NCBI RefSeq assembly: GCF_963506605.1
Contig: NC_083277.1
Location: forward strand, 58,652,001 to 58,716,000
Origin: Zootoca vivipara
Taxonomy: Eukaryota
Direction of reading: 5' to 3'
DNA: 64,000 bases
Shown here: piece after piece, positions 32,490 through 48,537 of the stretch
How the letters are laid out: each line of letters begins with the position of its first letter
Position numbering within the stretch: the first letter of the stretch is position 1
Translations under genes and position numbers: made by a program
The notes under the pieces: model-generated
Seen by the model: the letters and a program-made list of their open reading frames with translations, nothing else
Told to the model about the DNA's origin: nothing
The model's database searches: none

Positions 32490-34420
32490 CGCGCGCGTAT
32501 GTATGTATGTATGTATGTCAATATTTAAAATAGAATTTCAAACACAGGCAACAAAAACACATCTACACAAATATAACATACAAGAGCTGGGTTTTTCCCA
32601 TGATTTCAATTCTCTAGTCCCATCCCTTTTTAAAAAAAAAAAGTTGTTGGTATTATTATTAGTTCCATTTGCTACCCACAATTTCAAAGAAAGTCTCGAT
32701 TTGTGTTCTGTAGTAGCCTAGTGGGGTTATTCTGTTATTACTAGACAGCCCGCCCAACCCTGCAGGCATATTATTTAGCCACTGTCTTATGAATCCAGGC
32801 ACTCACTCTGTTTTTTCCGTAAATAATTATTTTATTTTATTTTTCAAAAACTGCTGTTAAATGTGTCCTGGAGCTGCCCACTCGCAATCTGGCAGGATCA
32901 ATCTGTAGGGACTAACATGTCTGCAATTTGTGTCTTGTGTGAAAAACTTTGTACCTGTTCTAACCCTGCAATATTTTTAACTTTAAAGGTGTCTTGCATG
33001 GAATCCCTGCCACCGACAATCTATAATTTGACAGGTTTAAGTGCCCGCAATGGGGCCTTACCATGTCACCAGATCACATTGCGCAAGTGGTAACTTGGGA
33101 TGTATAGAGAACAACTTTATCACGCAATTCACTGCTTGCCAGGACAATAAATCAGCATTTCCTGTGCTTGAATGTACACCATAATATAACACTGGGTGAA
33201 TTGTCTTTTGCATTCCTCATCTTTGCCTCATTATTAGGCATGTCATAATCAGAAAGGCCTTGCAGTCCAAAAGTTAAGTGGGGAGGACCTTTAAAAGTGT
33301 TGTGTCCTTCGTCTTCAGAAATATTGCAAAAGATATCCAAACCCAATATGCACCATGGAACTCAACAACCACTGCGGTTCTGATGGCAAGACCTATGGCA
33401 ACAAGTGTCAATTCTGCAATGCATATATGTGAGTATATATGTGAGATCATAGAGTTGGAAGGGACCCAGAGAGTGATATAGTCCAAGCTCCTGCAGTGCA
33501 GGAATCTGCCCCCCCCCCAAGATATCTTTATTGGAAGTTTAAAAGTACATGATTATATTTGCACTAAGCATGGTGAGATGTAAATAGAAGAAAGGAAAAG
33601 AAAAAGAGAATCAACACACTTGTAGAACGAAAAGTCAAGGGGGGGACCCCTTTCCTGGGCAGTGCAGGAATCATTGTGCACAATGTGGGGTGCTAACCCA
33701 TGACCCTGAGTTTTGTGTTGCTTATGAGGCCCAAATGAAGATGGTGAGCAGAGCTAATCTGTGGGTAGCCCTGAATTTTTAGATTGAGAGTGTTGGGAGG
33801 GCTATTCACAAGCACCACCCTCCTGACACTCTTGTTGCTAAGAGCGATCCAGGGGGTGGGGCAGGGGAAATATGCCCAAATGGGTTCTATCACCATCCCA
33901 CCAGTCCAGACACAAAGCAAAAGGTAGTAGGGTTGGCCCAGAAGAAAAATAACAAAAAAGCCCCATCAGGGAATTAGGGGATAGTAAGAACATTATTATG
34001 AAGGTAACAAAGGCCTACACTGGGTGTTGCCTTAATGTGGATCTTGGAATTGCTCTAGGTAGAAGTCTGAATATTTACCCCCTAGAGAAGTTTGACACAG
34101 ACGTACAATGGGGGCTGGAGAAGGGGGATCTTCCACAAAGTGGTAGACTGAAAAGGACATTGGTCCCTCTTGCTCAATATTGGCTAGGCTGACAGGAAGC
34201 AGTTTTCCAGGGTCTCAGACAGGATTCTTCCTCAGCCCTTTCCCCAAGACACAGAGCAAAGATGGTCTTAGCTTTCCCATCTATACAGTACTTCTCTTTA
34301 AGGAGTTATAATGAAAGTTGTATCTTATGAATTCTCACCTTTATTTCCTTCTTTTTTCTCATCAGTGAAAGTAAAAGAACGCTGAAACTGAAATACTATG
34401 GAAAATGCAAAAAAAATTAA
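31392..34420 (+). CDS. Single-domain Kazal inhibitor gene A (SPINK-like), 82 aa, P1 Met
   Basis: Exons 31392-31446 (55 nt), 32331-32359 (29 nt), 33319-33428 (110 nt), 34366-34420 give [82 protein letters not shown]. Kazal spacing C-X7-C-X7-C-X10-C-X2-C-X17-C, SPINK1-like 4-exon layout, AATAAA at 34567. Confidence 0.92.
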
Positions 34421-37210: not shown

Positions 37211-38095
37211 TCCTTTCATATTGCCAAAGTCTTTAATATGAGAGTATATTTTGCCTGAATTTGAACTTGATGAAGTGGGGAGAAATAAGATTCAGTTCTT
37301 GCTTAGGACAAACTTAACATACGTGTACACTTTATGAAGATTCTCTGATTCTATGTTATCAGCTCATGTCTGGTATGTCCTGACGGCTTTGTAACTGCTT
37401 ACTTTGTAAGGAATGTTGTCCCTGCAAGGATGAGTATGTAGTGTCCTTGCCCACTGTAGCTGCTCATCCTGTTTGGCAGCTGTTCTTGCGAGGGTAGATA
37501 TGTGATGATCTTATCTATAGCCGAAGGCTATCTACTTCCTTCATTCCCTGCTTTTCTTTTGGACAGCTTCCTAGCTTGTCCAGGGGTAGGGGTTGATATT
37601 CTGCAAGGCAAGGATTCGGGGCCTGTGAGGGACAGGGGATATCGCGAAGTCCCTCCCCTCCTGAGTTCAAGCCCATCCCCGAGCACAGGGGAAAGCAGAG
37701 AGAGTTCCGATTCCAGTGGGGAAGCAGGAAGTCGTGTCCGAGGCTCAGGCAAGGTAGCGGAGCCAGGGTCCCAGGTGGGACAGGAAGGGGCAAATAAGGG
37801 GGGGGAGACCCATCCCCCCAACTCCGGAATTGCGCAGAAAGCGGAGGGGAAAGAGGATGGGTCTACCCAAGCTTTTGTGTTGGAGAAAGACGCGCCAAAA
37901 GCCATTCGGAGGTTCTGAACCCGACTGAGCACATAGCTCCGTGTAAATAGCAATGACTTCAGCACTGTAAATAAGCAGCACCAATAAAAGAATAAAATGC
38001 AGAGCTGTGTAGAGTCGTTACTCTGAAGTAGCCCGCTCCGGCCACTGTGACAGCAACCTCCGAATCTTTTTTGGGGCTACTTTGGAGTTGCCGGG

Positions 38096-39379
38096 ATGAG
38101 TGCGTCAGAGGCGGAGAAATGGCGGCAGATCGCAGAGAAAGCCCAACAGGACCTGCAGCAACTGGCGCTGCAGGCACAGGGGGAATTAAAGGCAGCTAAA
38201 GAAGAAACCAAGAAGGTCCAGGAGGACAGGCTACAACTTGCGGAACAGGTGAGAGCGCTTCAGGAAAAAGAGCAGCAATTAAGGGCGGTGGCGGTAGAGC
38301 TCCAAAACAAGTTGGATGCCGAGAAAAACAAGGCGGGAGGGGCCCCCCAACTCCAAGTGCTGCCAGGAAGGAGAGCGGGGACCCTAGTAAGCAAGTTCAA
38401 TGGAGACCCGAGGGAATATCATGGCTTTGAGACTGAGATCGTGTATGCTCTTGAGCTGCACCATGATGAGTTCCCTGATGATGAGCACAGGGTAGCGTTT
38501 ATTGTGGAACACCTTACAGGGGCAGCCAGGGAGTGGCTAAGACCGTTAATCGCGACAAAAAATCCTTGCATGAAGAATGTCAAACTATTTCTAGAGGCTT
38601 TAAAAACTATGTATGCGTCCGATAGCCATATGGACCAGACCAAGGAGGAACTGCATAATTTAAGGCAAAGAACAATGACAGTTCGCGAATATTGGGCGAG
38701 ATTCACCATGCTAGTGCACAGACTGGGGTGGGAACTGCACTCGCCTCCAATGGAAGCGGCGTTCTACCTGGGGTTGAATGAGGATGTGAAAGATGAGCTC
38801 TCGAGAGGTCCAAAGCCCAGTAATATGGATCAGCTGAGCAAAGCGGCTCTGGCGGTGGGGGTGAGACAGGAATCCCGGTGGAACGACAAGCAAGCAACGT
38901 GCGCAAAGCGGGCTTGGTTCCCACGGTCGCAGGAGAAGCCACTCCCCCAACAACCCTTCCAAGCCACGCCTGGGGCCAGCCAGGACCAGGAACCCATGCA
39001 AATTGATAGCGCGCGCGGGGGGGGGCTTTTCAAACCCCAGCGGCGACAAGACGCAAGGAGGGAAGGGGCGGGAATCGCTTTCTCTGCAACTCCCCCCAGC
39101 ATCTCGTCAGAGACTGCCCACATCGCAGAGAGTGGCAAGGAAAGGCGGGAACAGTTGTGCCCTCCCCCACTGACGCAGCACCACAGCAGGGAAACGGGAA
39201 AGCCTGGTTGCAGGAGACAAGGGGCAGCAGCCAGGCGCAGTCAGCAGACAACAGCCCCAGCCCGCCCACCCGCACAGCGCGGAGCAGAGCCAGCCCACCC
39301 CTCCCAGAGCAGGAGTGGTTCTAGAAGTGACGCTAACGCTCCCAAATGGCTATCCCCTGACGGTCCTCGCCTTAATTGA
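38096..39379 (+). CDS. gag: Gypsy Gag (retrotransposon capsid-like); frameshift at the G9 run 39017-39025 displaces a degenerate zinc knuckle
   Basis: FNGDPREY, LTGAAREW, LRQRTMTVREY, EPMQID. The knuckle (R)FLCNSPQHLVRDC lies in a different frame from 39076. Confidence 0.85.
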   Translation: MSASEAEKWRQIAEKAQQDLQQLALQAQGELKAAKEETKKVQEDRLQLAEQVRALQEKEQQLRAVAVELQNKLDAEKNKAGGAPQLQVLPGRRAGTLVSKFNGDPREYHGFETEIVYALELHHDEFPDDEHRVAFIVEHLTGAAREWLRPLIATKNPCMKNVKLFLEALKTMYASDSHMDQTKEELHNLRQRTMTVREYWARFTMLVHRLGWELHSPPMEAAFYLGLNEDVKDELSRGPKPSNMDQLSKAALAVGVRQESRWNDKQATCAKRAWFPRSQEKPLPQQPFQATPGASQDQEPMQIDSARGGGLFKPQRRQDARREGAGIAFSATPPSISSETAHIAESGKERREQLCPPPLTQHHSRETGKPGCRRQGAAARRSQQTTAPARPPAQRGAEPAHPSQSRSGSRSDANAPKWLSPDGPRLN

Positions 39380-42300
39380 CAGTGGTGCATCAGCCAACTT
39401 CTTCTCGAGAAACTTTGCAGAGGAGCACCAGATCCAGCTTCTGCAGCTGGACTTTCCCCTGCACGTAGCCACCATTGACGGCAGGGAGTTGCTGGGAGGG
39501 GCCATCACTCATCAACCCCCCCCCATGAGAATGACGGTGGGAAGGCACTCAGAGACACTGGCATTCAACGTCACCACCATCTCAGACCCCCCCATCGTCT
39601 TGGGCATGAGCTGGCTGGCGCGCCACGACCCCTCCATCAGTTGGCACCAGAGATGCATCACATTTGGGTCGGACTTTTGTCTGGAACATTGCATGCAGCA
39701 CCAACCAGGGGAGGGGCCTCCAATAGCCACGGTGGCCACCATGCACGTCAAGGGGGGTGAGGCGATACCCAAACCATACTGGGACCTGCAGGAGGTCTTC
39801 AGCGAAGCGGAGTCCGACCACCTACCCCCACACAGGTCTTTTGACTGCCAGATCAACCTGGTGCCAGGGGCAATGATACCCCCAGCCAAGCTGTACGCCA
39901 TGTCAGATCAGGAACTGGAGGATCTGCGTGCGTTTATAGACAAGAACCTCAAACGGGGGTTCATCAGAGAAAGCAAGGCAGCAGGGGGCAGCCCGGTCTT
40001 CTGGGTGGACAAGAAAGACACGCAACAGCGCCGTCTTGTGGTGGATTTTAGACGGCTCAATTCAGTGACAGAGCCAGTGGCTTTCCCCATGCCCAGAGTG
40101 GACGATCTCCTGACAGCGGCACGCAGGGGCAAGATTTTCACCAAGCTAGACCTGAGGGGGGTGTACAACTTGATCAGAATCCGGGAAGGCGATGAGTGGA
40201 AGACCACGATGTTCACGCCTCTGGGCTCTTTTGAATATCTGGTGATGCCCTTCGGGTTGCAAGGGGGCTCAGCATGCTTCCAGGCCTTCATGCACCACGT
40301 CCTGGGGTCCCTCCTCTTCAAGAACTGCTTGGTCTTCCTGGATGACATCCTTATCTATTCCAATGACCCAGTGCAACATGTGAAGGATGTCAGGGAGGTG
40401 TTGCAGCGCCTGAAGGAGAACCACCTGTATGTGAAGCTGGAGAAGTGCAAGTTTCACACCAGGGAAGTAGACTTCCTGGGCTACAAACTGTCAGACAAGG
40501 GGCTGGCGATGGACAAGGACAAGGTGCAGGCCATCCTGGACTGGCACAGCCCCAGGACGCGCAAAGATGCCCAACGCCTCCTAGGCTTCGCCAACTTCTA
40601 CAGGAAATTCATCAAGAACTTCTCACGTGTTACGGCTCCCATCACGGACTGCCTGAGAGGCAAGCAGAAGTTCAGGTGGACCCCAGAGGCGCAAGCAGCG
40701 TTCGAAAGCCTCAAGAGGGTGTTCGCTTCAGACCAAAACCTGTTCCACGTGGTGCAAGATGCGCCCCTACGCGTGGAAACAGACGCTTCAGACAGGGCTT
40801 TGGGAGCGATCCTGTTGCAACTGGACGCCAACAGAGAGTGGAGACCTTGTGCCTTCTTCTCCAGGAAGCTGACCCAGCCGGAGCGCAACTACACGGTGTT
40901 TGATAGGGAACTGCTTGCGATCCACGCTGCTTTCCAGCACTGGCGACACTTCCTGGTGGGCGCCAAGCACCCCATCCAGGTGTGCACAGACCACAAGAAC
41001 CTGGAGTTCTGGAGAACAGCCAGGGTGCTCAACCAGCGGCAGATACGGTGGGCAGAGTTCTTCTCGAACTTCAACTTCTCCATCCACTACATCCCGGGGG
41101 AGCAGAATGTCAGGGCGGATGCCCTCTCCCGCAAACCAGAGTACATGGAGCAGGAGTTGCCACCAGCACCCAGGCACATTTTCCCCCCATCAGCATGGTC
41201 CTGCGGAGCAGCAGTGGTGAGCGAGGCAGAACTCACAGCACTGACAGCAGCTGATGAGTTTGCCACCCGCATCTTCAGAGAACTGAGAGGGGGGAGGGAG
41301 CAGGCAAAAGACTTTGCAGAACGCAGGGGGCTGCTTTTCTACAAGGGGGCACTGTACCTGCCCACCACCCAGCTTAGACGTAAGGTCCTCAAGCAGATGC
41401 ACGACAACCCGACGGCGGGTCATTTTGGAAGGGACAAAACCGCTCACCTAGTCATGAGACACTTCTGGTGGCCAGGGGTGCGGGAAGATGTTAGAGACTA
41501 TGTACGGGGCTGTGACACCTGCCAGCGAGCAAAGGTGGTCAGAGCGCCACCAGCAGGTTTGCTGGAGCCATTAGCCACACCGCACAGGCCGTGGGAAGTA
41601 GTGTCCATGGACTTCATCACAGACCTGCCGTCGTCCAGGGGCAAGACCGCAGTGTTGGTGGTGGTGGACCTTATGTCCAAAATGTGCCACTTTATACCGT
41701 GTGCCAGGGCGGTCTCTGCAGAAGAGACAGCCAAACTGTTTGTTGACCACGTATTCAGACTGCATGGATTACCTTTAAGGGTTATTTCGGATCGTGGCCG
41801 CCAATTTGTTTCCAGGTTCTGGAGGCGGCTCATGAACCTCCTGCAGGTGGAGGTCAGCTTATCGACGGCGAGACACCCGCAGACCAACGGACAGGCGGAG
41901 AGGGTCAACGCCATTCTGCAGCGGTACCTAAGATGCTACGTCAGCCAGAGACAAACGGACTGGGTGGATCGCCTGCCACTGGCGGAATTTGCCTACAATA
42001 ATGCAGTGCACGTCTCCACAGGGGTGTCGCCCTTTAAGGCCAATTATGGGCGCGACCTCAGATCTTTCCCGGAGAGGGAGGGGGAGGAGGAGGAGGAGGG
42101 CCCACTGGCAGAGGATTGGGCAGAGGAACTGGAGACGGTGCACCAGCAGCTCCGAGAACACTTGGAGAGGGCCAAGGAAGCGTACAAGAAGGGGGCAGAT
42201 CACCACAGGCGACAAGGGGAGGTCATCAGGGTGGGGGACAAGGTTTGGTTGTCCTCGGAGGGCCTTCCCATTAGAGGGAGGTGCAAAAAGCTGGCGCCCA

Positions 42301-42740
42301 GACGGCTGGGCCCCTTCAAGGTCACGCAACAGGTCAATCCGGTGGCCTTCAGATTGGCACTACCAGAGGACATGAGGGTGCATCCAGTGTTTCATAGATC
42401 ACTGCTGTCGCCGTACAGGGAAAGCAGCAGGCTCCGAGACAGCGAACAAACCCCCGAGGGAGGGGGGGAGAGGGAAGGCAGGGAGCAACTCAATGAGGCC
42501 ACGGCCATTCTTGATTCACGGAGAGGGGTGGGGGGCCTGGAGTACCTCATGGCATGGGAGGATGCTCCACCGTCACAGAATCAATGGGTCCCAGCCACTC
42601 AGATACGGGAGGAATTCTTGGTGGAAGAATTTCACGCCCTCTTTCCCCACAAACCCAAGCCCTGGCACATGGAAAGGGAGGGGGGAGGGGGAGGAAGTAC
42701 TGGAGAGCAGTTCACCATGGGGATGGGAAGCGGAGTTTGA
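39189..42740 (+). CDS. pol: Gypsy Pol: protease, RT, RNase H, integrase, chromodomain
   Basis: LIDSGA, FLDDILIY, ETDAS, TDHKNL, HHCC finger (HDNPTAGH...CDTC), SMDF/SDRG/QAER DDE triad, HPVFH and chromodomain ILDSR...EYLMAW...NQWVP. The frame is open from the slippery site at 39189. Confidence 0.95.
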   Translation, partial: GKRESLVAGDKGQQPGAVSRQQPQPAHPHSAEQSQPTPPRAGVVLEVTLTLPNGYPLTVLALIDSGASANFFSRNFAEEHQIQLLQLDFPLHVATIDGRELLGGAITHQPPPMRMTVGRHSETLAFNVTTISDPPIVLGMSWLARHDPSISWHQRCITFGSDFCLEHCMQHQPGEGPPIATVATMHVKGGEAIPKPYWDLQEVFSEAESDHLPPHRSFDCQINLVPGAMIPPAKLYAMSDQELEDLRAFIDKNLKRGFIRESKAAGGSPVFWVDKKDTQQRRLVVDFRRLNSVTEPVAFPMPRVDDLLTAARRGKIFTKLDLRGVYNLIRIREGDEWKTTMFTPLGSFEYLVMPFGLQGGSACFQAFMHHVLGSLLFKNCLVFLDDILIYSNDPVQHVKDVREVLQRLKENHLYVKLEKCKFHTREVDFLGYKLSDKGLAMDKDKVQAILDWHSPRTRKDAQRLLGFANFYRKFIKNFSRVTAPITDCLRGKQKFRWTPEAQAAFESLKRVFASDQNLFHVVQDAPLRVETDASDRALGAILLQLDANREWRPCAFFSRKLTQPERNYTVFDRELLAIHAAFQHWRHFLVGAKHPIQVCTDHKNLEFWRTARVLNQRQIRWAEFFSNFNFSIHYIPGEQNVRADALSRKPEYMEQELPPAPRHIFPPSAWSCGAAVVSEAELTALTAADEFATRIFRELRGGREQAKDFAERRGLLFYKGALYLPTTQLRRKVLKQMHDNPTAGHFGRDKTAHLVMRHFWWPGVREDVRDYVRGCDTCQRAKVVRAPPAGLLEPLATPHRPWEVVSMDFITDLPSSRGKTAVLVVVDLMSKMCHFIPCARAVSAEETAKLFVDHVFRLHGLPLRVISDRGRQFVSRFWRRLMNLLQVEVSLSTARHPQTNGQAERVNAILQRYLRCYVSQRQTDWVDRLPLAEFAYNNAVHVSTGVSPFKANYGRDLRSFPEREGEEEEEGPLAEDWAEELETVHQQLREHLERAKEAYKKGADHHRRQGEVIRVGDKVWLSSEGLPIRGRCKKLAPRRLGPFKVTQQVNPVAFRLALPEDMRVHPVFHRSLLSPYRESSRLRDSEQTPEGGGEREGREQLNEATAILDSRRGVGGLEYLMAWEDAPPSQNQWVPATQIREEFLVEEFHALFPHKPKPWHMEREGGGGGSTGEQFTMGMGSGV

Positions 42741-43734
42741 GGAACCAGAGGAAGAAGTATGGGCGTCGCCGAGATCCACCCAGTCAGAGGAAGAAGCAGA
42801 CTGGCAGCACATTTTTACCCCCACCAGCTCTGACGCCACGGACTTTTTGGGATTCCAGTCCTCCCAGGCGGAAGGGGGGGGCTCGCAGGACTGGGGGGAG
42901 GTGTTCACACCAACGGGCTCGGAAAGTACTGAGTTCTTAGGCTTCCAGTCGTCACCGACACCTGGGGGGGGACCTGGGGAGGGGAGAAGGGGAGCTTGGG
43001 AGGGGGGTGGATGTGAGGGACAGGGGATATCGCGAAGTCCCTCCCCTCCTGAGTTCAAGCCCATCCCCGAGCACAGGGGAAAGCAGAGAGAGTTCCGATT
43101 CCAGTGGGGAAGCAGGAAGTCGTGTCCGAGGCTCAGGCAAGGTAGCGGAGCCAGGGTCCCAGGTGGGACAGGAAGGGGCAAATAAGGGGGGAGACCCATC
43201 CCCCCAACTCCGGAATTGCGCAGAAAGCGGAGGGGAAAGAGGATGGGTCTACCCAAGCTTTTGTGTTGGAGAAAGACGCGCCAAAAGCCATTCGGAGGTT
43301 CTGAACCCGACTGAGCACATAGCTCCGTGTAAGTAGCAATGACTTCAGCACTGTAAATAAGCAGCACCAATAAAAGAATAAAATGCAGAGCTGTGTAGAG
43401 TCGTTACTCTGAAGTAGCCCACTCCGGCCACTGTGACAGGGCCTTATGGATTCATTAGCAATACGCTGCATCATATTTTGGCACATTTGCAAGAAGCAGG
43501 GAATACATAAGCAAAGAAGCAATAAGATAATAATAGGTCCTAAGAACATCATTAACAAACCCTTGAGCCATGCCGACCCGGGGAATATGCCATTTAGCCA
43601 TGACATGTCCCATCTGTAGGTGTGACTCCTCAGTTCTGAAGCTTTGCACTATGATGGTTGCATTGTCCTTCTTTTTAAAAGGATCAAGATCTTTCCAAAC
43701 CACTGTGATCTCAATAGAATGAATATTGCTACAA

Positions 43735-46390: not shown

Positions 46391-48537
46391 TAATATGGAA
46401 TTTAAAACACAGGCAACAAAAACACATCTACACAAATATAACATAAAAAGCTGGATTTTTCCCATGATTTCACATGTCTAGTCCCATTCCTTTTTTAAAA
46501 AGTCAGTGGTATTATTATTAGTTCCAGCTGCTACTCACAATTTGTAAGAAAGTCTCAGCTTTTGGTCTGTAGTAGCCTAATGGGGCTATTCTATTATTAC
46601 TAGACAGATTGCCCAACCTTCCAGGCATATTATTTAGTCACTGTTTTATGAATCCAGGCACTCACTGTGTTTTTTTCATAAATAAAATTTTGTTTCACAG
46701 TGTGAAAAACTTTGTACCTGTTCTAACCCTGCAATATTTTTAACTTTAAAGGTGTCTTGTATGAAATCCCTGCCACCAACCATCTATAATTTGACAGGTT
46801 TAAGACCCCGAAATGGGGCCTTAACCATGTCACCAAATCACATGCCCCAAGTGGGAACTTGGGATGAATAGAGACCAACATTATCACGCAATTCACTGCT
46901 TGCCAGGACAATAAATCAGCATTTCCTGTGCTTGGATGCACGCCTTAATATAACACTTGGTGTATTCCTCATCTGTCCCTCATTATTAGGCATGTCATAA
47001 TCAGAAAGGCCTTGCAGTCCAAAGGTTAAGTGGGGAGGACCTTTAAAAGTGTTGTGTTCTTCGTCTTCAGGAATATTGCAAACATCATCCAAACCCAGCA
47101 TGCATCTTCGAGAAACGTCCCCACTGCGGTTCTGATGGCAATACCTATGGCAACCAGTGTGACTTCTGCAATGCATATTTGTGAGTACATCATAGAATCA
47201 CAGAGTTGGAAGGGACCCCGAGAGTCATGTAGTCCAACCTCGTGCAGTGCAGGAATCTTTTTTCCACCTCAGACATCTTTATTGGAAGTTTAAAAGTACA
47301 TGATTATATTTGCACTAAGCATGGTGAGATGTAAATAGAAGAAAGGAAAAGAAAAAGAGAATCAACCCCCATGTAGATGGAAAAGTCAAGGGTGGGGAAC
47401 CCCTTTCCTGGGCAGTGCAGGAATCATTGTGCACAATGTGGGGTGCTAACCCATGACCCTGAGTTTTGTGTTGCTAATGAGGCCCGAATGAAGATGATGA
47501 ATAGAGCTAATCTGTGGGTAGCCCTGAATTTTAAGATGAAGTGGGTTGGGAGGGCTATTCACATGCACCACCCTCCTGACACTCTTGTTGCTGCTTCTAA
47601 GAGCGATCCAGGGGGGCAGGCAGGGAAAGTATGCCCAAATGGGCTCTATCACCATCCCACCAGGCCAGACTCAAAGCAAAAGGTAGTAGGGTTGGCTCAG
47701 AAGAATAATAATAAAAAGCCCCATCAGGGAATTAGGGGATAGTAAGCACCATGGTCTAAACCACAGAGCCTAAGACTTGCTAATCAGAAGGTTGGCGGTT
47801 TGAATCCCTGCGACAGAGTGAGCTCCCATTGCTCGGTCCCTGCTCCTGCCAACCTAGCAGTTCGAAAGCACGTCAAAGTGCAAGTAGATAAATAGGTACT
47901 GCTGCGGCTGGAAGGTAAACGGCGTTTCCATGCACTGCTCTGGTTCACCAGAAGCAGCTTAGTCATGCTGGCCACATGACCCGGAAGCTGTCTGCGGATA
48001 AACGCCGGCTCCCTCAGCCAGTAAAGAGAGATGAGCACCGCAACCCCAGAGTCCTCCACGACTGGACCTGACGGTCAGGGGTCCCTTTGCCTTTACATTT
48101 AAGAACATTATTATGAAGGTAACAAAGGCCTACACTAGGTGTTGCCTTAATGTGGACCTTGGAATTGCTCTAGGTAGAAGTCTGAATATTTACTCCTAGA
48201 GAAGTTTGACACAGACATACAATGAGGGCTAGAGAAGAGGGATCTTCCACAAAGTGGTAGACTGAAAAGGACATTGGTCCCTCTTGCTCAATATTGGCTA
48301 GGCTGACAGGAAGCAGTTTTCCAGGGTCTCAGACAGGATTCTTCCTCAGCCCTTTCCCCAAGACACAGAGCAAAGATGGTCTTAGCTTTCCCATCTATAC
48401 AGTACTTCTCTTTAAGGAGTTATAATGAAAGTTGTATCTTATGAATTCTCACCTTTATTTCCTTCTTTTTTCTCATCAGTGAAAGTAAAAGAACGCTGAA
48501 ACTGAATTACTATGGAAAATGCATAATGAAAGTTTAA
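45255..48537 (+). CDS. Single-domain Kazal inhibitor gene B (SPINK-like), 83 aa, P1 Phe
   Basis: Exons 45255-45309, 46221-46249, 47071-47180, 48480-48537 give [83 protein letters not shown]. Canonical splice sites; AATAAA at 48687. Confidence 0.92.
47750..48100 (+). mobile_element. Sauria SINE in intron 3 of gene B
   Basis: B-box-like GGTTTGAATCCC, Sauria SINE body and cctttgcctttac tail; absent from gene A at about 33985. Confidence 0.88.

What the first reader, a model, noticed from the sequence alone, without database searches (positions are those of the whole stretch)
42680..42960. Gypsy integrase tail with two tandem helix-acidic-FLGF motifs: possible LEDGF/TFIIS-N-domain tethering module
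Seen: removing one G from the G6 run at 42680-42685 extends Pol past the chromodomain into an acidic tail (EREGEGEEVLESSSPWGWEAEFEEPEEEVWASPRSTQSEEEA). This is followed by two 22-aa repeats 90 nt apart: DWQHIFTPTSSDATDFLGFQSS (42799-42864) and DWGEVFTPTGSESTEFLGFQSS (42889-42954). The repeats differ at 11 synonymous third positions while keeping the amino acid, plus conservative I/V and D/E swaps, which indicates selection on the protein in this frame. Established: host partners of the LEDGF/p75 integrase-binding domain and related TFIIS N-terminal domains (MLL1/KMT2A, JPO2/CDCA7L, POGZ, IWS1) use a short helix, an acidic or phosphorylatable linker and FxGF. From memory JPO2 reads ..ADIFNAPSDDEEFVGF and MLL1 ..EDEQFLGF; both need verifying. 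Lentiviral integrase binds the same LEDGF domain to target genes. Inference: this chromovirus may mimic host FxGF motifs to recruit LEDGF/HRP2/IWS1-type elongation factors, giving a second targeting module beside the chromodomain. I know of no description of this in Gypsy elements but cannot search the literature.
Basis: partly seen in the sequence, partly recalled or inferred. Interest (0 to 1): 0.9.

Follow-up and report, generated by a model that had tools for sequence, protein, structure and literature searches.

The report
Retrotransposon integrase tail with host-like docking motifs
A young, very abundant lizard-type Gypsy retrotransposon carries, after its integrase, a disordered acidic tail with two conserved copies of a short motif that looks like the peptides host proteins use to dock onto LEDGF-type chromatin readers. 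This may be a new way for a retroelement to choose where it inserts, but binding is untested.

Summary
Window 37624-43438 is a full-length Ty3/Gypsy chromovirus with 99%-identical LTRs and a 5-bp target duplication.

Between its chromodomain and polypurine tract lies a 98-residue acidic tail (net charge -19). It holds two 30-codon repeats, each reading W-x-x-[IV]-F, a 9-residue S/T/D/E linker, then FLGF. Between the repeats, synonymous sites are saturated (pS 0.88) and pN is 0.20, so the peptide has been under selection.

In this copy the tail is one letter out of the Pol frame at a G run. Most laid contig depth that bridges the run, and some RNA reads, are one letter shorter there. Related elements read straight through, including plain ORFs on Logan and ENA contigs.

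The motif W..[LIVM]F-x8-9-FxGF is invariant in 13 instances from four lineages of one well-supported clade. It is absent from 96 other chromovirus Pols scanned. The same clade has lost the aromatic cage of its chromodomain.

All sequence-level features of a TND-interacting / LEDGF-binding motif are present. I found no prior description in the paper library.

The scan noted the same feature at ten other places in this genome; none of those notes is checked.

The parts
37624..38052 (+). 5' LTR (429 nt, TG...CA); target-site duplication GGGCC at 37619-37623
38096..39379 (+). gag ORF (frame 2), with Retrotrans_gag / Ty3 capsid domains
39315..42740 (+). pol ORF (frame 0; open from about 39174): protease, RT, RNase H, integrase zinc finger, integrase core, SH3, chromodomain
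42498..42635 (+). Degenerate chromodomain (Pfam 26.0 bits against a cut-off of 25.1). The cage positions read N / W / A instead of Y / W / Y
42680..42685 (+). G6 run where this copy's Pol frame (0) and tail frame (1) part. Many other copies are one letter shorter here
42673..42798 (+). Acidic, variable first part of the tail (frame 1). Common differences between copies here are often non-synonymous
42799..42864 (+). Motif copy 1: DWQHIF, linker TPTSSDATD, FLGF, QSS
42889..42954 (+). Motif copy 2: DWGEVF, linker TPTGSESTE, FLGF, QSS
42964..42971 (+). G8 run, a second place where copy length varies. It sets the reading frame downstream of motif 2
42972..43011 (+). Purine-rich tract directly before the 3' LTR (polypurine tract region)
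43012..43438 (+). 3' LTR (427 nt; 3 substitutions and one 2-nt G-run difference from the 5' LTR); target-site duplication GGGCC at 43439-43443

Best explanation
Shown. The stretch is the true C-terminal tail of the Pol/integrase protein of a young, transcribed, very high-copy chromovirus family. This copy carries a one-letter length difference in a G run that puts the tail out of the Pol frame. Most other copies that can be followed across the run, and all sampled relatives, read through. The tail is disordered and strongly acidic. It carries two anciently duplicated copies of a short linear motif, W-x-x-[ILVM]-F, then 8-9 residues rich in S/T/D/E/G, then F-x-G-F-x-S. The motif has been kept by purifying selection and is invariant across a monophyletic clade of lizard elements. 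That clade has also lost the methyl-lysine cage of its chromodomain.

Inferred. The motif is a docking peptide that imitates host TND-interacting / LEDGF-IBD-binding motifs. The hydrophobic-Phe pair would sit in the first pocket of the five-helix domain, the acidic or phosphorylated linker on the basic patch, and FxGF in the second pocket. Two copies would add avidity. By binding an H3K36me-reading LEDGF/HRP2-type protein, the integrase complex would be tethered to transcribed chromatin, replacing the heterochromatin reading of a canonical chromodomain.
For: Element anatomy.

Selection on the peptide: pS 0.88 against pN 0.20 between the two copies. Common variants among copies touch only the x positions of the motif cores.

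Frame:
- One letter is left out at 42680 in 15 contigs of run X1, carrying 75.4k summed depth, while total depth just downstream is only 67-99k.
- In run X12 (a second organism) the shorter form carries 87.5 of the 92.7 depth that bridges the run.
- 2 of 10 RNA reads show the shorter form.
- Continuous Pol-plus-tail ORFs exist on Logan contigs (P0138, P0139) and on an ENA contig (P0021).

Conservation: 13 instances in 4 lineages keep W, [LIVM]F and F.GF invariant. The motif is absent from 96 other anchored chromovirus Pols scanned. The motif-bearing rows form one branch with SH-aLRT 100 and internal paths of 0.9-1.25 changes per site.

Cage loss is confined to this clade.

The published TIM definition is matched feature by feature (PMC9987994). 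FxGF docking on LEDGF-type domains is conserved from flies (JIL-1 DFxGFDE binding JASPer) to humans (PMC6877644). CK2 phosphorylation of the linker controls binding (PMC7220354).

Precedents for tethering through an integrase C-terminal tail: MLV-BET and Ty5-Sir4 (PMC4176367).

The tail is disordered in AlphaFold2.
Against: - No binding evidence of any kind.
- No sequence search links the tail to known TIM carriers, as expected for a short motif.
- No helix is predicted for the isolated peptide.
- The linker of one Podarcis lineage (TPTLSAST) has no acidic residue and would depend wholly on phosphorylation.
- The clade is a single origin, so the co-occurrence of motif gain and cage loss is one event, not a statistical correlation.
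- The in-frame share rests on short unitig depths that break at the G run.
- Insertion-site preference was not measured.
Confidence: 0.5

Rival explanations
1. The tail motif is a real, selected docking or regulatory peptide, but for something other than a TND. Candidates are another nuclear host factor, nuclear import, integrase multimerisation or particle assembly, or phosphorylation-controlled stability. On this reading the FxGF resemblance is convergent or coincidental.
For: Selection and conservation show that the motif has a function, not which function. W and the FTPT/T-P sites are conserved features that are not part of the published TIM definition. No helix is predicted. No binding data exist.
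Against: The invariant positions are exactly those the TIM definition names as contact residues. The other motif classes I checked by eye (LIR W-x-x-[ILV], BRCT pS-x-x-F) are not kept across lineages.
Confidence: 0.35
2. The tail is made only as a minor product by recoding (ribosomal or polymerase slippage at the G run). The main Pol ends at 42740, so both forms are functional.
For: Both run lengths occur at appreciable depth, and both appear among RNA reads. In this copy gag-to-pol is also a +1 offset.
Against: Relatives and most of the bridging depth have a single continuous frame. G runs are simple hot spots for length errors during reverse transcription, sequencing and assembly. This element has 20 homopolymer runs of six or more letters.
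Confidence: 0.05
3. The tail is decayed or non-functional sequence next to the polypurine tract, and the likeness to FxGF motifs is chance.
For: In this window's copy the tail is out of frame. G-rich DNA gives long open frames on both strands.
Against: Synonymous sites are saturated while amino acids are conserved. The motif is invariant over four lineages. ORFs are continuous in relatives. The other frames contain stops.
Confidence: 0.03

Closest known systems
Host TND-interacting motifs / LEDGF IBD-binding motifs (JPO2/CDCA7L, KMT2A/MLL1, IWS1, POGZ, CDC7-ASK, MED1; JIL-1 in Drosophila)
   Same: A disordered region with a hydrophobic anchor ending in Phe, an 8-9-residue S/T/D/E/G linker with CK2-type sites, and FxGF. 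There is more than one copy per protein, as in JPO2, SPT6 and LEO1. From my own memory, unverified here, the JPO2 motifs also read I-F, then 8-10 acidic/S/T residues, then F-x-G-F.
   Different: The carrier is a retrotransposon integrase, not a host transcription factor. An invariant Trp precedes the anchor. One lineage has a linker with no acidic residue. Binding is not shown.
Lentiviral integrase with LEDGF/p75 (and HRP2)
   Same: The proposed partner and the proposed outcome are the same: an integrase tethered to an H3K36me reader, so that integration goes into transcribed genes.
   Different: Lentiviral integrase binds the IBD through its folded catalytic-core dimer interface and N-terminal domain, not through a linear FxGF peptide. 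LEDGF does not bind integrases of other retroviral genera (PMC4176367).
Gammaretroviral (MLV) integrase C-terminal tail with the BET ET domain; Ty5 integrase 6-residue targeting domain with Sir4
   Same: A short peptide in the disordered integrase C-terminal tail, dispensable for catalysis, docks on a host chromatin protein and steers integration. That review explicitly predicted further examples.
   Different: The motif and the presumed partner differ. Here the peptide follows a degenerate chromodomain and is present twice.
Chromovirus chromodomains (group I with the YWY cage; plant group II without the first and third aromatic; CRM elements whose coding region runs into the 3' LTR)
   Same: Same position at the integrase C-terminus. 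The element is a chromovirus by domain order. Like group II, it lacks the first and third cage residues. Like CRM elements, relatives read into the 3' LTR (PMC3605345).
   Different: That paper (2013) says group II chromodomains were known only from plants, whereas this is a vertebrate clade. The added FxGF tail is not described for any chromovirus in the papers I could search.

Membership tests
TND-interacting motif (TIM) / LEDGF IBD-binding motif | Lies in an intrinsically disordered region | tested here: met
   AlphaFold2 on the tail alone gives mean pLDDT 57 and no secondary structure. Composition is E 18%, S 15%, G 12%, with net charge -19 over 98 residues.
TND-interacting motif (TIM) / LEDGF IBD-binding motif | Short helix with conserved F/V/L/I side chains on the N-terminal side of the linker | tested here: inconclusive
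   [LIVM]-F is invariant and is preceded by an invariant W in 13 instances. No helix is predicted for the free peptide. Known TIM helices form on binding, which could not be modelled.
TND-interacting motif (TIM) / LEDGF IBD-binding motif | Flexible acidic or phosphorylatable linker of 8-16 residues rich in D/E/G/S/T | tested here: met
   The linker is 8-9 residues in all instances. In the window's two copies, 7 and 8 of the 9 residues are D/E/S/T/G, and a T-x-x-D/E (CK2-type) site is present in both. One Podarcis lineage has only S/T and no D/E.
TND-interacting motif (TIM) / LEDGF IBD-binding motif | F-x-G-F (required by the LEDGF and HRP2 domains) | tested here: met
   Invariant in 13 of 13 instances, with x = L, Q, H or R. 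Absent after the chromodomain in 96 other chromovirus Pols.
TND-interacting motif (TIM) / LEDGF IBD-binding motif | Physical binding to a TND/IBD that depends on the Phe residues and is enhanced by CK2 phosphorylation | not testable with these tools
   No TND/IBD sequence could be obtained. Binding assays are bench work.
Chromovirus (Ty3/Gypsy, Metaviridae) | LTRs with a target-site duplication, gag, pol ordered PR-RT-RH-IN, and a chromodomain at the integrase C-terminus | tested here: met
   The Chromo hit is marginal (26.0 bits against a cut-off of 25.1).
Group I (HP1-like) chromovirus chromodomain | Aromatic cage Y/W/Y that reads H3K9me | tested here: not met
   The window reads N/W/A. The clade reads N or S at the first position (one Y), W, R or K at the second, and T, E or A at the third (one F). 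86 of the 96 Pols scanned without the motif read YWY, FWY or WWY. Cage definition from PMC3605345.
Integrase C-terminal-tail tethering (MLV-BET, Ty5-Sir4 type) | A short peptide after the last folded integrase domain that binds a host chromatin protein and biases integration | not testable with these tools
   Position and conservation fit. The partner and any integration bias are unknown.

The most novel reading that the evidence does not exclude
A clade of lizard chromoviruses gave up methyl-lysine reading by its chromodomain and instead evolved tandem mimics of host TND-interacting motifs on the integrase tail. With these it hijacks LEDGF/HRP2-type H3K36me readers. This would be the lentiviral targeting strategy reached independently by linear-motif mimicry. 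It would also be the first LEDGF-type tether in a retrotransposon and the first retroelement mimic of a TND-interacting motif.
Probability: 0.45. Interest if true: 0.85.

Novelty: new variant of a known kind. Interest (0 to 1): 0.75.

Why it matters
How retroelements choose insertion sites is known in molecular detail for only a handful of cases: HIV-LEDGF, MLV-BET, Ty1, Ty3, Ty5 and Tf1.

A vertebrate retrotransposon that imitates the host's own LEDGF/TND docking peptide would add a new mechanism. It would show convergence with lentiviruses through a different interface. It would also give a natural example of a targeting module being swapped (chromodomain cage lost, motif gained) within one element lineage.

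The family is young, transcribed and extremely abundant. Its insertion landscape could therefore be read directly from genomes and compared with sister families that keep a canonical chromodomain.

The peptides are short enough for immediate binding tests. They could also serve as compact natural ligands for LEDGF-type domains.

Tried and rejected
Searches that gave nothing usable:
- Whole-library phmmer with the tail: only four low-complexity or repeat proteins, judged spurious.
- PDB sequence searches with the tail, with each repeat and with a two-row profile: chance hits only (endothiapepsin, WD40 designs, RexA, AhR).
- ESM Atlas: no usable hit.
- Tail-focused search with P0012: only its own Podarcis kin.

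Methods that failed or were unavailable:
- AlphaFold2 on the tail alone: disordered, so it says nothing about a binding helix.
- Aligning the short tail to full-length relatives with MAFFT misplaced it. I cut the segments in a script instead.
For that reason dN/dS across families was not computed.
- Complex prediction was not used, because no TND/IBD sequence could be obtained from the window or from searches, and only bacterial, archaeal or phage references are offered.
- The papers with the original IBM/TIM alignments are not held. A text search for the remembered JPO2 and MLL1 strings found nothing relevant.

Readings considered and rejected:
- LIR (Atg8-binding) motif: copy 1 fits W-x-x-I with upstream acids, but copy 2 and the Podarcis lineages do not.
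- BRCT-type pS-x-x-F: not conserved.
- The minus-strand ORF 42573-43370: an effect of G/C-rich composition, since the codon pattern supports plus-strand frame 1.
- Programmed frameshift as the main route: most bridging depth and all relatives are in a single frame.

Full report
THE ELEMENT. Direct repeats at 37624-38052 and 43012-43438 are LTRs (TG...CA). They differ by 3 substitutions and one 2-nt G-run length difference, and are flanked by a GGGCC target-site duplication. Between them lie gag (38096-39379) and pol (39315-42740). Pfam finds protease, RT, RNase H, integrase zinc finger, integrase core, Tf2-type SH3 and a marginal chromodomain. A purine-rich tract ends at 43011. The finding's stretch therefore lies between the chromodomain and the polypurine tract of a young, full-length Ty3/Gypsy chromovirus.

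THE OBSERVATION. Frame 1 from 42673 reads a 98-residue tail (E 18%, S 15%, G 12%, net charge -19). It holds two 30-codon units at 42799-42888 and 42889-42978.
- Unit 1 starts DWQHIF-TPTSSDATD-FLGF-QSS.
- Unit 2 starts DWGEVF-TPTGSESTE-FLGF-QSS.
Over the first 22 codons, 11 differ only synonymously and 7 non-synonymously. Sixteen of 23 base differences are at third positions (p 4e-4). pS is 0.88 (saturated) against pN 0.20 (Fisher p 1e-5). The other two frames carry stops. The duplication is therefore old and the peptide has been kept by selection in this frame.

FRAME. In this copy Pol (frame 0) runs on for 58 nt after the G6 run at 42680-42685 and stops. The tail is in frame 1. I laid two DNA contig sets of the same organism (X1, X3), one of a second organism (X12) and one raw RNA run (X21) on 42000-43011.
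- The family is extremely abundant.
- At 42680 one letter is left out in 15 contigs of X1 (75.4k of 369.6k summed depth), 3 contigs of X3, one contig of X12 (87.5 of 198.6) and 2 of 10 RNA reads.
- Most contigs break at this run. Depth falls from about 656k in the bin before it to about 168k in the bin after it, so the denominators at 42680 are inflated.
- Just downstream, at 42698 and 42701, total depth in X1 is only 67-68k, and about 60k of that carries variant letters. In X12 those same variant letters sit on the same contig as the shorter run, and there the shorter form carries 87.5 of the 92.7 depth that bridges.
- Five more RNA reads leave the window's sequence at 42684 into a variant GGA-rich stretch and were not scored.
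My reading is that the shorter, continuous-frame form is the commoner one among copies that can be followed across the run, and that this window's form is a minority state. This rests on short unitigs and needs a long-read census. RNA reads cover the tail, mostly with the first mate on the minus strand. In most stranded libraries that means sense transcripts.

RELATIVES. A search with the Pol C-terminus found Podarcis muralis Gypsy Pol proteins that carry the motif after the chromodomain, in frame with Pol. They read either DDWLF-TPTLSAST-FQGF, or RWR[EG][VM]F followed by a 9-residue S/T/D/E-rich linker (for example KTSDDDEGS) and then FRGF. A wider search with the integrase region returned 120 Pols.
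- Of those with a recognisable integrase C-terminal anchor, only the closest relatives (58-64% identity) carry F-x-G-F after the chromodomain. These include an ENA-contig ORF (P0021) reading QWKTVF-ESDENEDTD-FLGF.
- One fungal protein has an unrelated chance FRGF.
- 96 others lack the motif, and most of them end right after the chromodomain.
- Podarcis UniRef entries are gene models, which could hide frame breaks. P0021 (ENA) and P0138 and P0139 (Logan contigs of 5113 and 4419 nt) are plain ORF calls that contain Pol, tail and motif in one frame.
- Aligned, the 13 instances from four lineages keep W, [LIVM]F and F.GF invariant and S nearly so. Everything else varies.
- The second Podarcis lineage also has an upstream variant copy (REYF-GTTDEEEE-LEGF), so tandem copies are not peculiar to this window.
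- In a quick maximum-likelihood tree of the integrase region (70 rows; P0021 was left out because it is too short upstream), the motif-bearing rows form one branch with SH-aLRT 100. Paths between lineages are 0.9-1.25 changes per site.
- Common variants among copies of the window's family hit only the x positions of the motif cores (H to N, G to A, and Q to P after FLGF, plus synonymous changes). The acidic stretch upstream takes many non-synonymous changes.

CHROMODOMAIN. In HP1-like group I chromodomains, three aromatic residues (Y, W, Y) form the cage for H3K9me. Group II lacks the first and third and was reported only from plants (PMC3605345).
- In my alignment, 86 of the 96 motif-less Pols read YWY, FWY or WWY at these columns.
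- Every member of the motif clade lacks the first or the third aromatic, and nearly all lack both. The window reads N/W/A, and one Podarcis lineage has even lost the central W.
- Motif gain and cage loss coincide on one branch. This is a single event, so it is suggestive rather than statistical.

WHAT THE MOTIF RESEMBLES. The published definition of a TND-interacting motif has three parts: an obligate short helix that anchors through F/V/L/I; a flexible linker of 8-16 residues rich in D/E/G and in S/T that CK2 phosphorylates; and an FxGF that fills a second shallow pocket. FxGF is present in, and essential for, all known partners of the LEDGF and HRP2 domains. Several proteins carry more than one such motif (PMC9987994).
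- FxGF docking on a LEDGF-type domain is conserved from flies (JIL-1 DFxGFDE binding JASPer) to humans (PMC6877644).
- Phosphoserines in the MLL1 motif control its binding to LEDGF (PMC7220354).
- The tail motif meets each sequence-level criterion: a disordered context, a hydrophobic-Phe anchor, an 8-9-residue S/T/D/E/G linker with T-x-x-D/E sites, and an invariant FxGF.
- The helix itself is not predicted in the free peptide.
- From my own memory, unverified here, the two JPO2 motifs read I-F, then 8-10 acidic/S/T residues, then F-x-G-F, which would be a very close match. I could not check this because the primary papers are not held.

MECHANISM PROPOSED. Shown: a selected, conserved, duplicated linear motif on a disordered integrase tail of an active-looking family. 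Inferred: it docks on a LEDGF/HRP2-type five-helix domain and tethers the integration complex to H3K36me-marked transcribed chromatin, taking over from the disabled chromodomain. The design has precedents in the MLV integrase tail with the BET ET domain and the Ty5 integrase hexapeptide with Sir4. Lentiviral integrase reaches the same LEDGF domain through a folded interface instead (PMC4176367). I put this at about 0.5. The main rival, at about 0.35, is that the motif serves another partner or role.

NOVELTY. Full-text searches combining FxGF, LEDGF, PSIP1, HDGFL2 or TND with retrotransposon or chromovirus found no description of such a motif in a Gypsy element. The library lacks most subscription journals, so this is not proof of absence. 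First-stage readers of this scan noted the same feature at ten other places in this genome. Those are other copies of the family and unchecked notes, not independent support.

LIMITS.
- No binding or complex model: no TND sequence was obtainable.
- The organism was not identified. Its nearest relatives are lacertid-lizard elements.

Noticed in passing
window 42964-42971, 43012-43340 and 37798-37805 / 43186-43191: A second G run (G8) just after motif 2 also varies in length among copies: one letter is left out in 33% (X1), 55% (X3) and 100% (X12) of depth. Relatives (P0021, P0012, P0139) read on across the polypurine tract and LTR start (..GVDV[RT]E..) and far into the 3' LTR, ending ..LLCWKR.... 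The window encodes a similar ..LLCWRK.. peptide at about 43258-43275, but behind further frame breaks. Its two LTRs differ by two letters in another G run. Pol of this clade thus seems to extend into U3, as described for plant CRM elements.
   Followed up: partly
window 38055-38065 and 37904-37914: The 11 nt just after the 5' LTR (AACCTCCGAAT) are the exact reverse complement of ATTCGGAGGTT inside the LTR. This is the signature of Tf1/sushi-type self-priming rather than a tRNA primer site. It would place the start of R near 37904.
   Followed up: partly
window 39174-39379: In this copy gag (frame 2) and pol (frame 0) overlap by about 200 nt, with pol at +1 relative to gag. Several relatives have gag and pol fused in one ORF. 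I did not resolve whether the offset is programmed or another homopolymer length difference of this copy.
   Followed up: no
P0025, P0026 (Anolis carolinensis Pol; cluster of 366 members): A sister squamate family with an F/W/F cage has a 100-residue tail containing ..DIVMPDEEENLGFLPS... That is a hydrophobic patch, an acidic run and x-L-G-F without the first Phe. It may be a distant or degenerate relative of the motif.
   Followed up: no
window 33052-33963 and 46816-47722: The element sits, in the same orientation, between two about 90%-identical copies of Kazal-domain exons (..[19 protein letters not shown] followed by GTGAGT) of the ovomucoid-like gene cluster. I did not resolve whether it is intronic or lies between paralogues. 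It is a single insertion and says nothing about targeting.
   Followed up: no
P0016 (Rhineura), P0047 (Podarcis), P0092 (Pelodytes): Annotated host proteins (TM9SF2 isoform, a vomeronasal type-2 receptor, a transglutaminase) carry integrase, SH3 or chromodomain segments of this kind of element. These are probably gene-model chimeras with intronic insertions.
   Followed up: no
window 42000-43011, runs X12 and X21: Near-identical copies (many at least 99% alike) occur in a second organism label (B). The family is transcribed in organism A: depth reaches 27 from about 6% of one RNA run, mostly in the sense orientation.
   Followed up: partly
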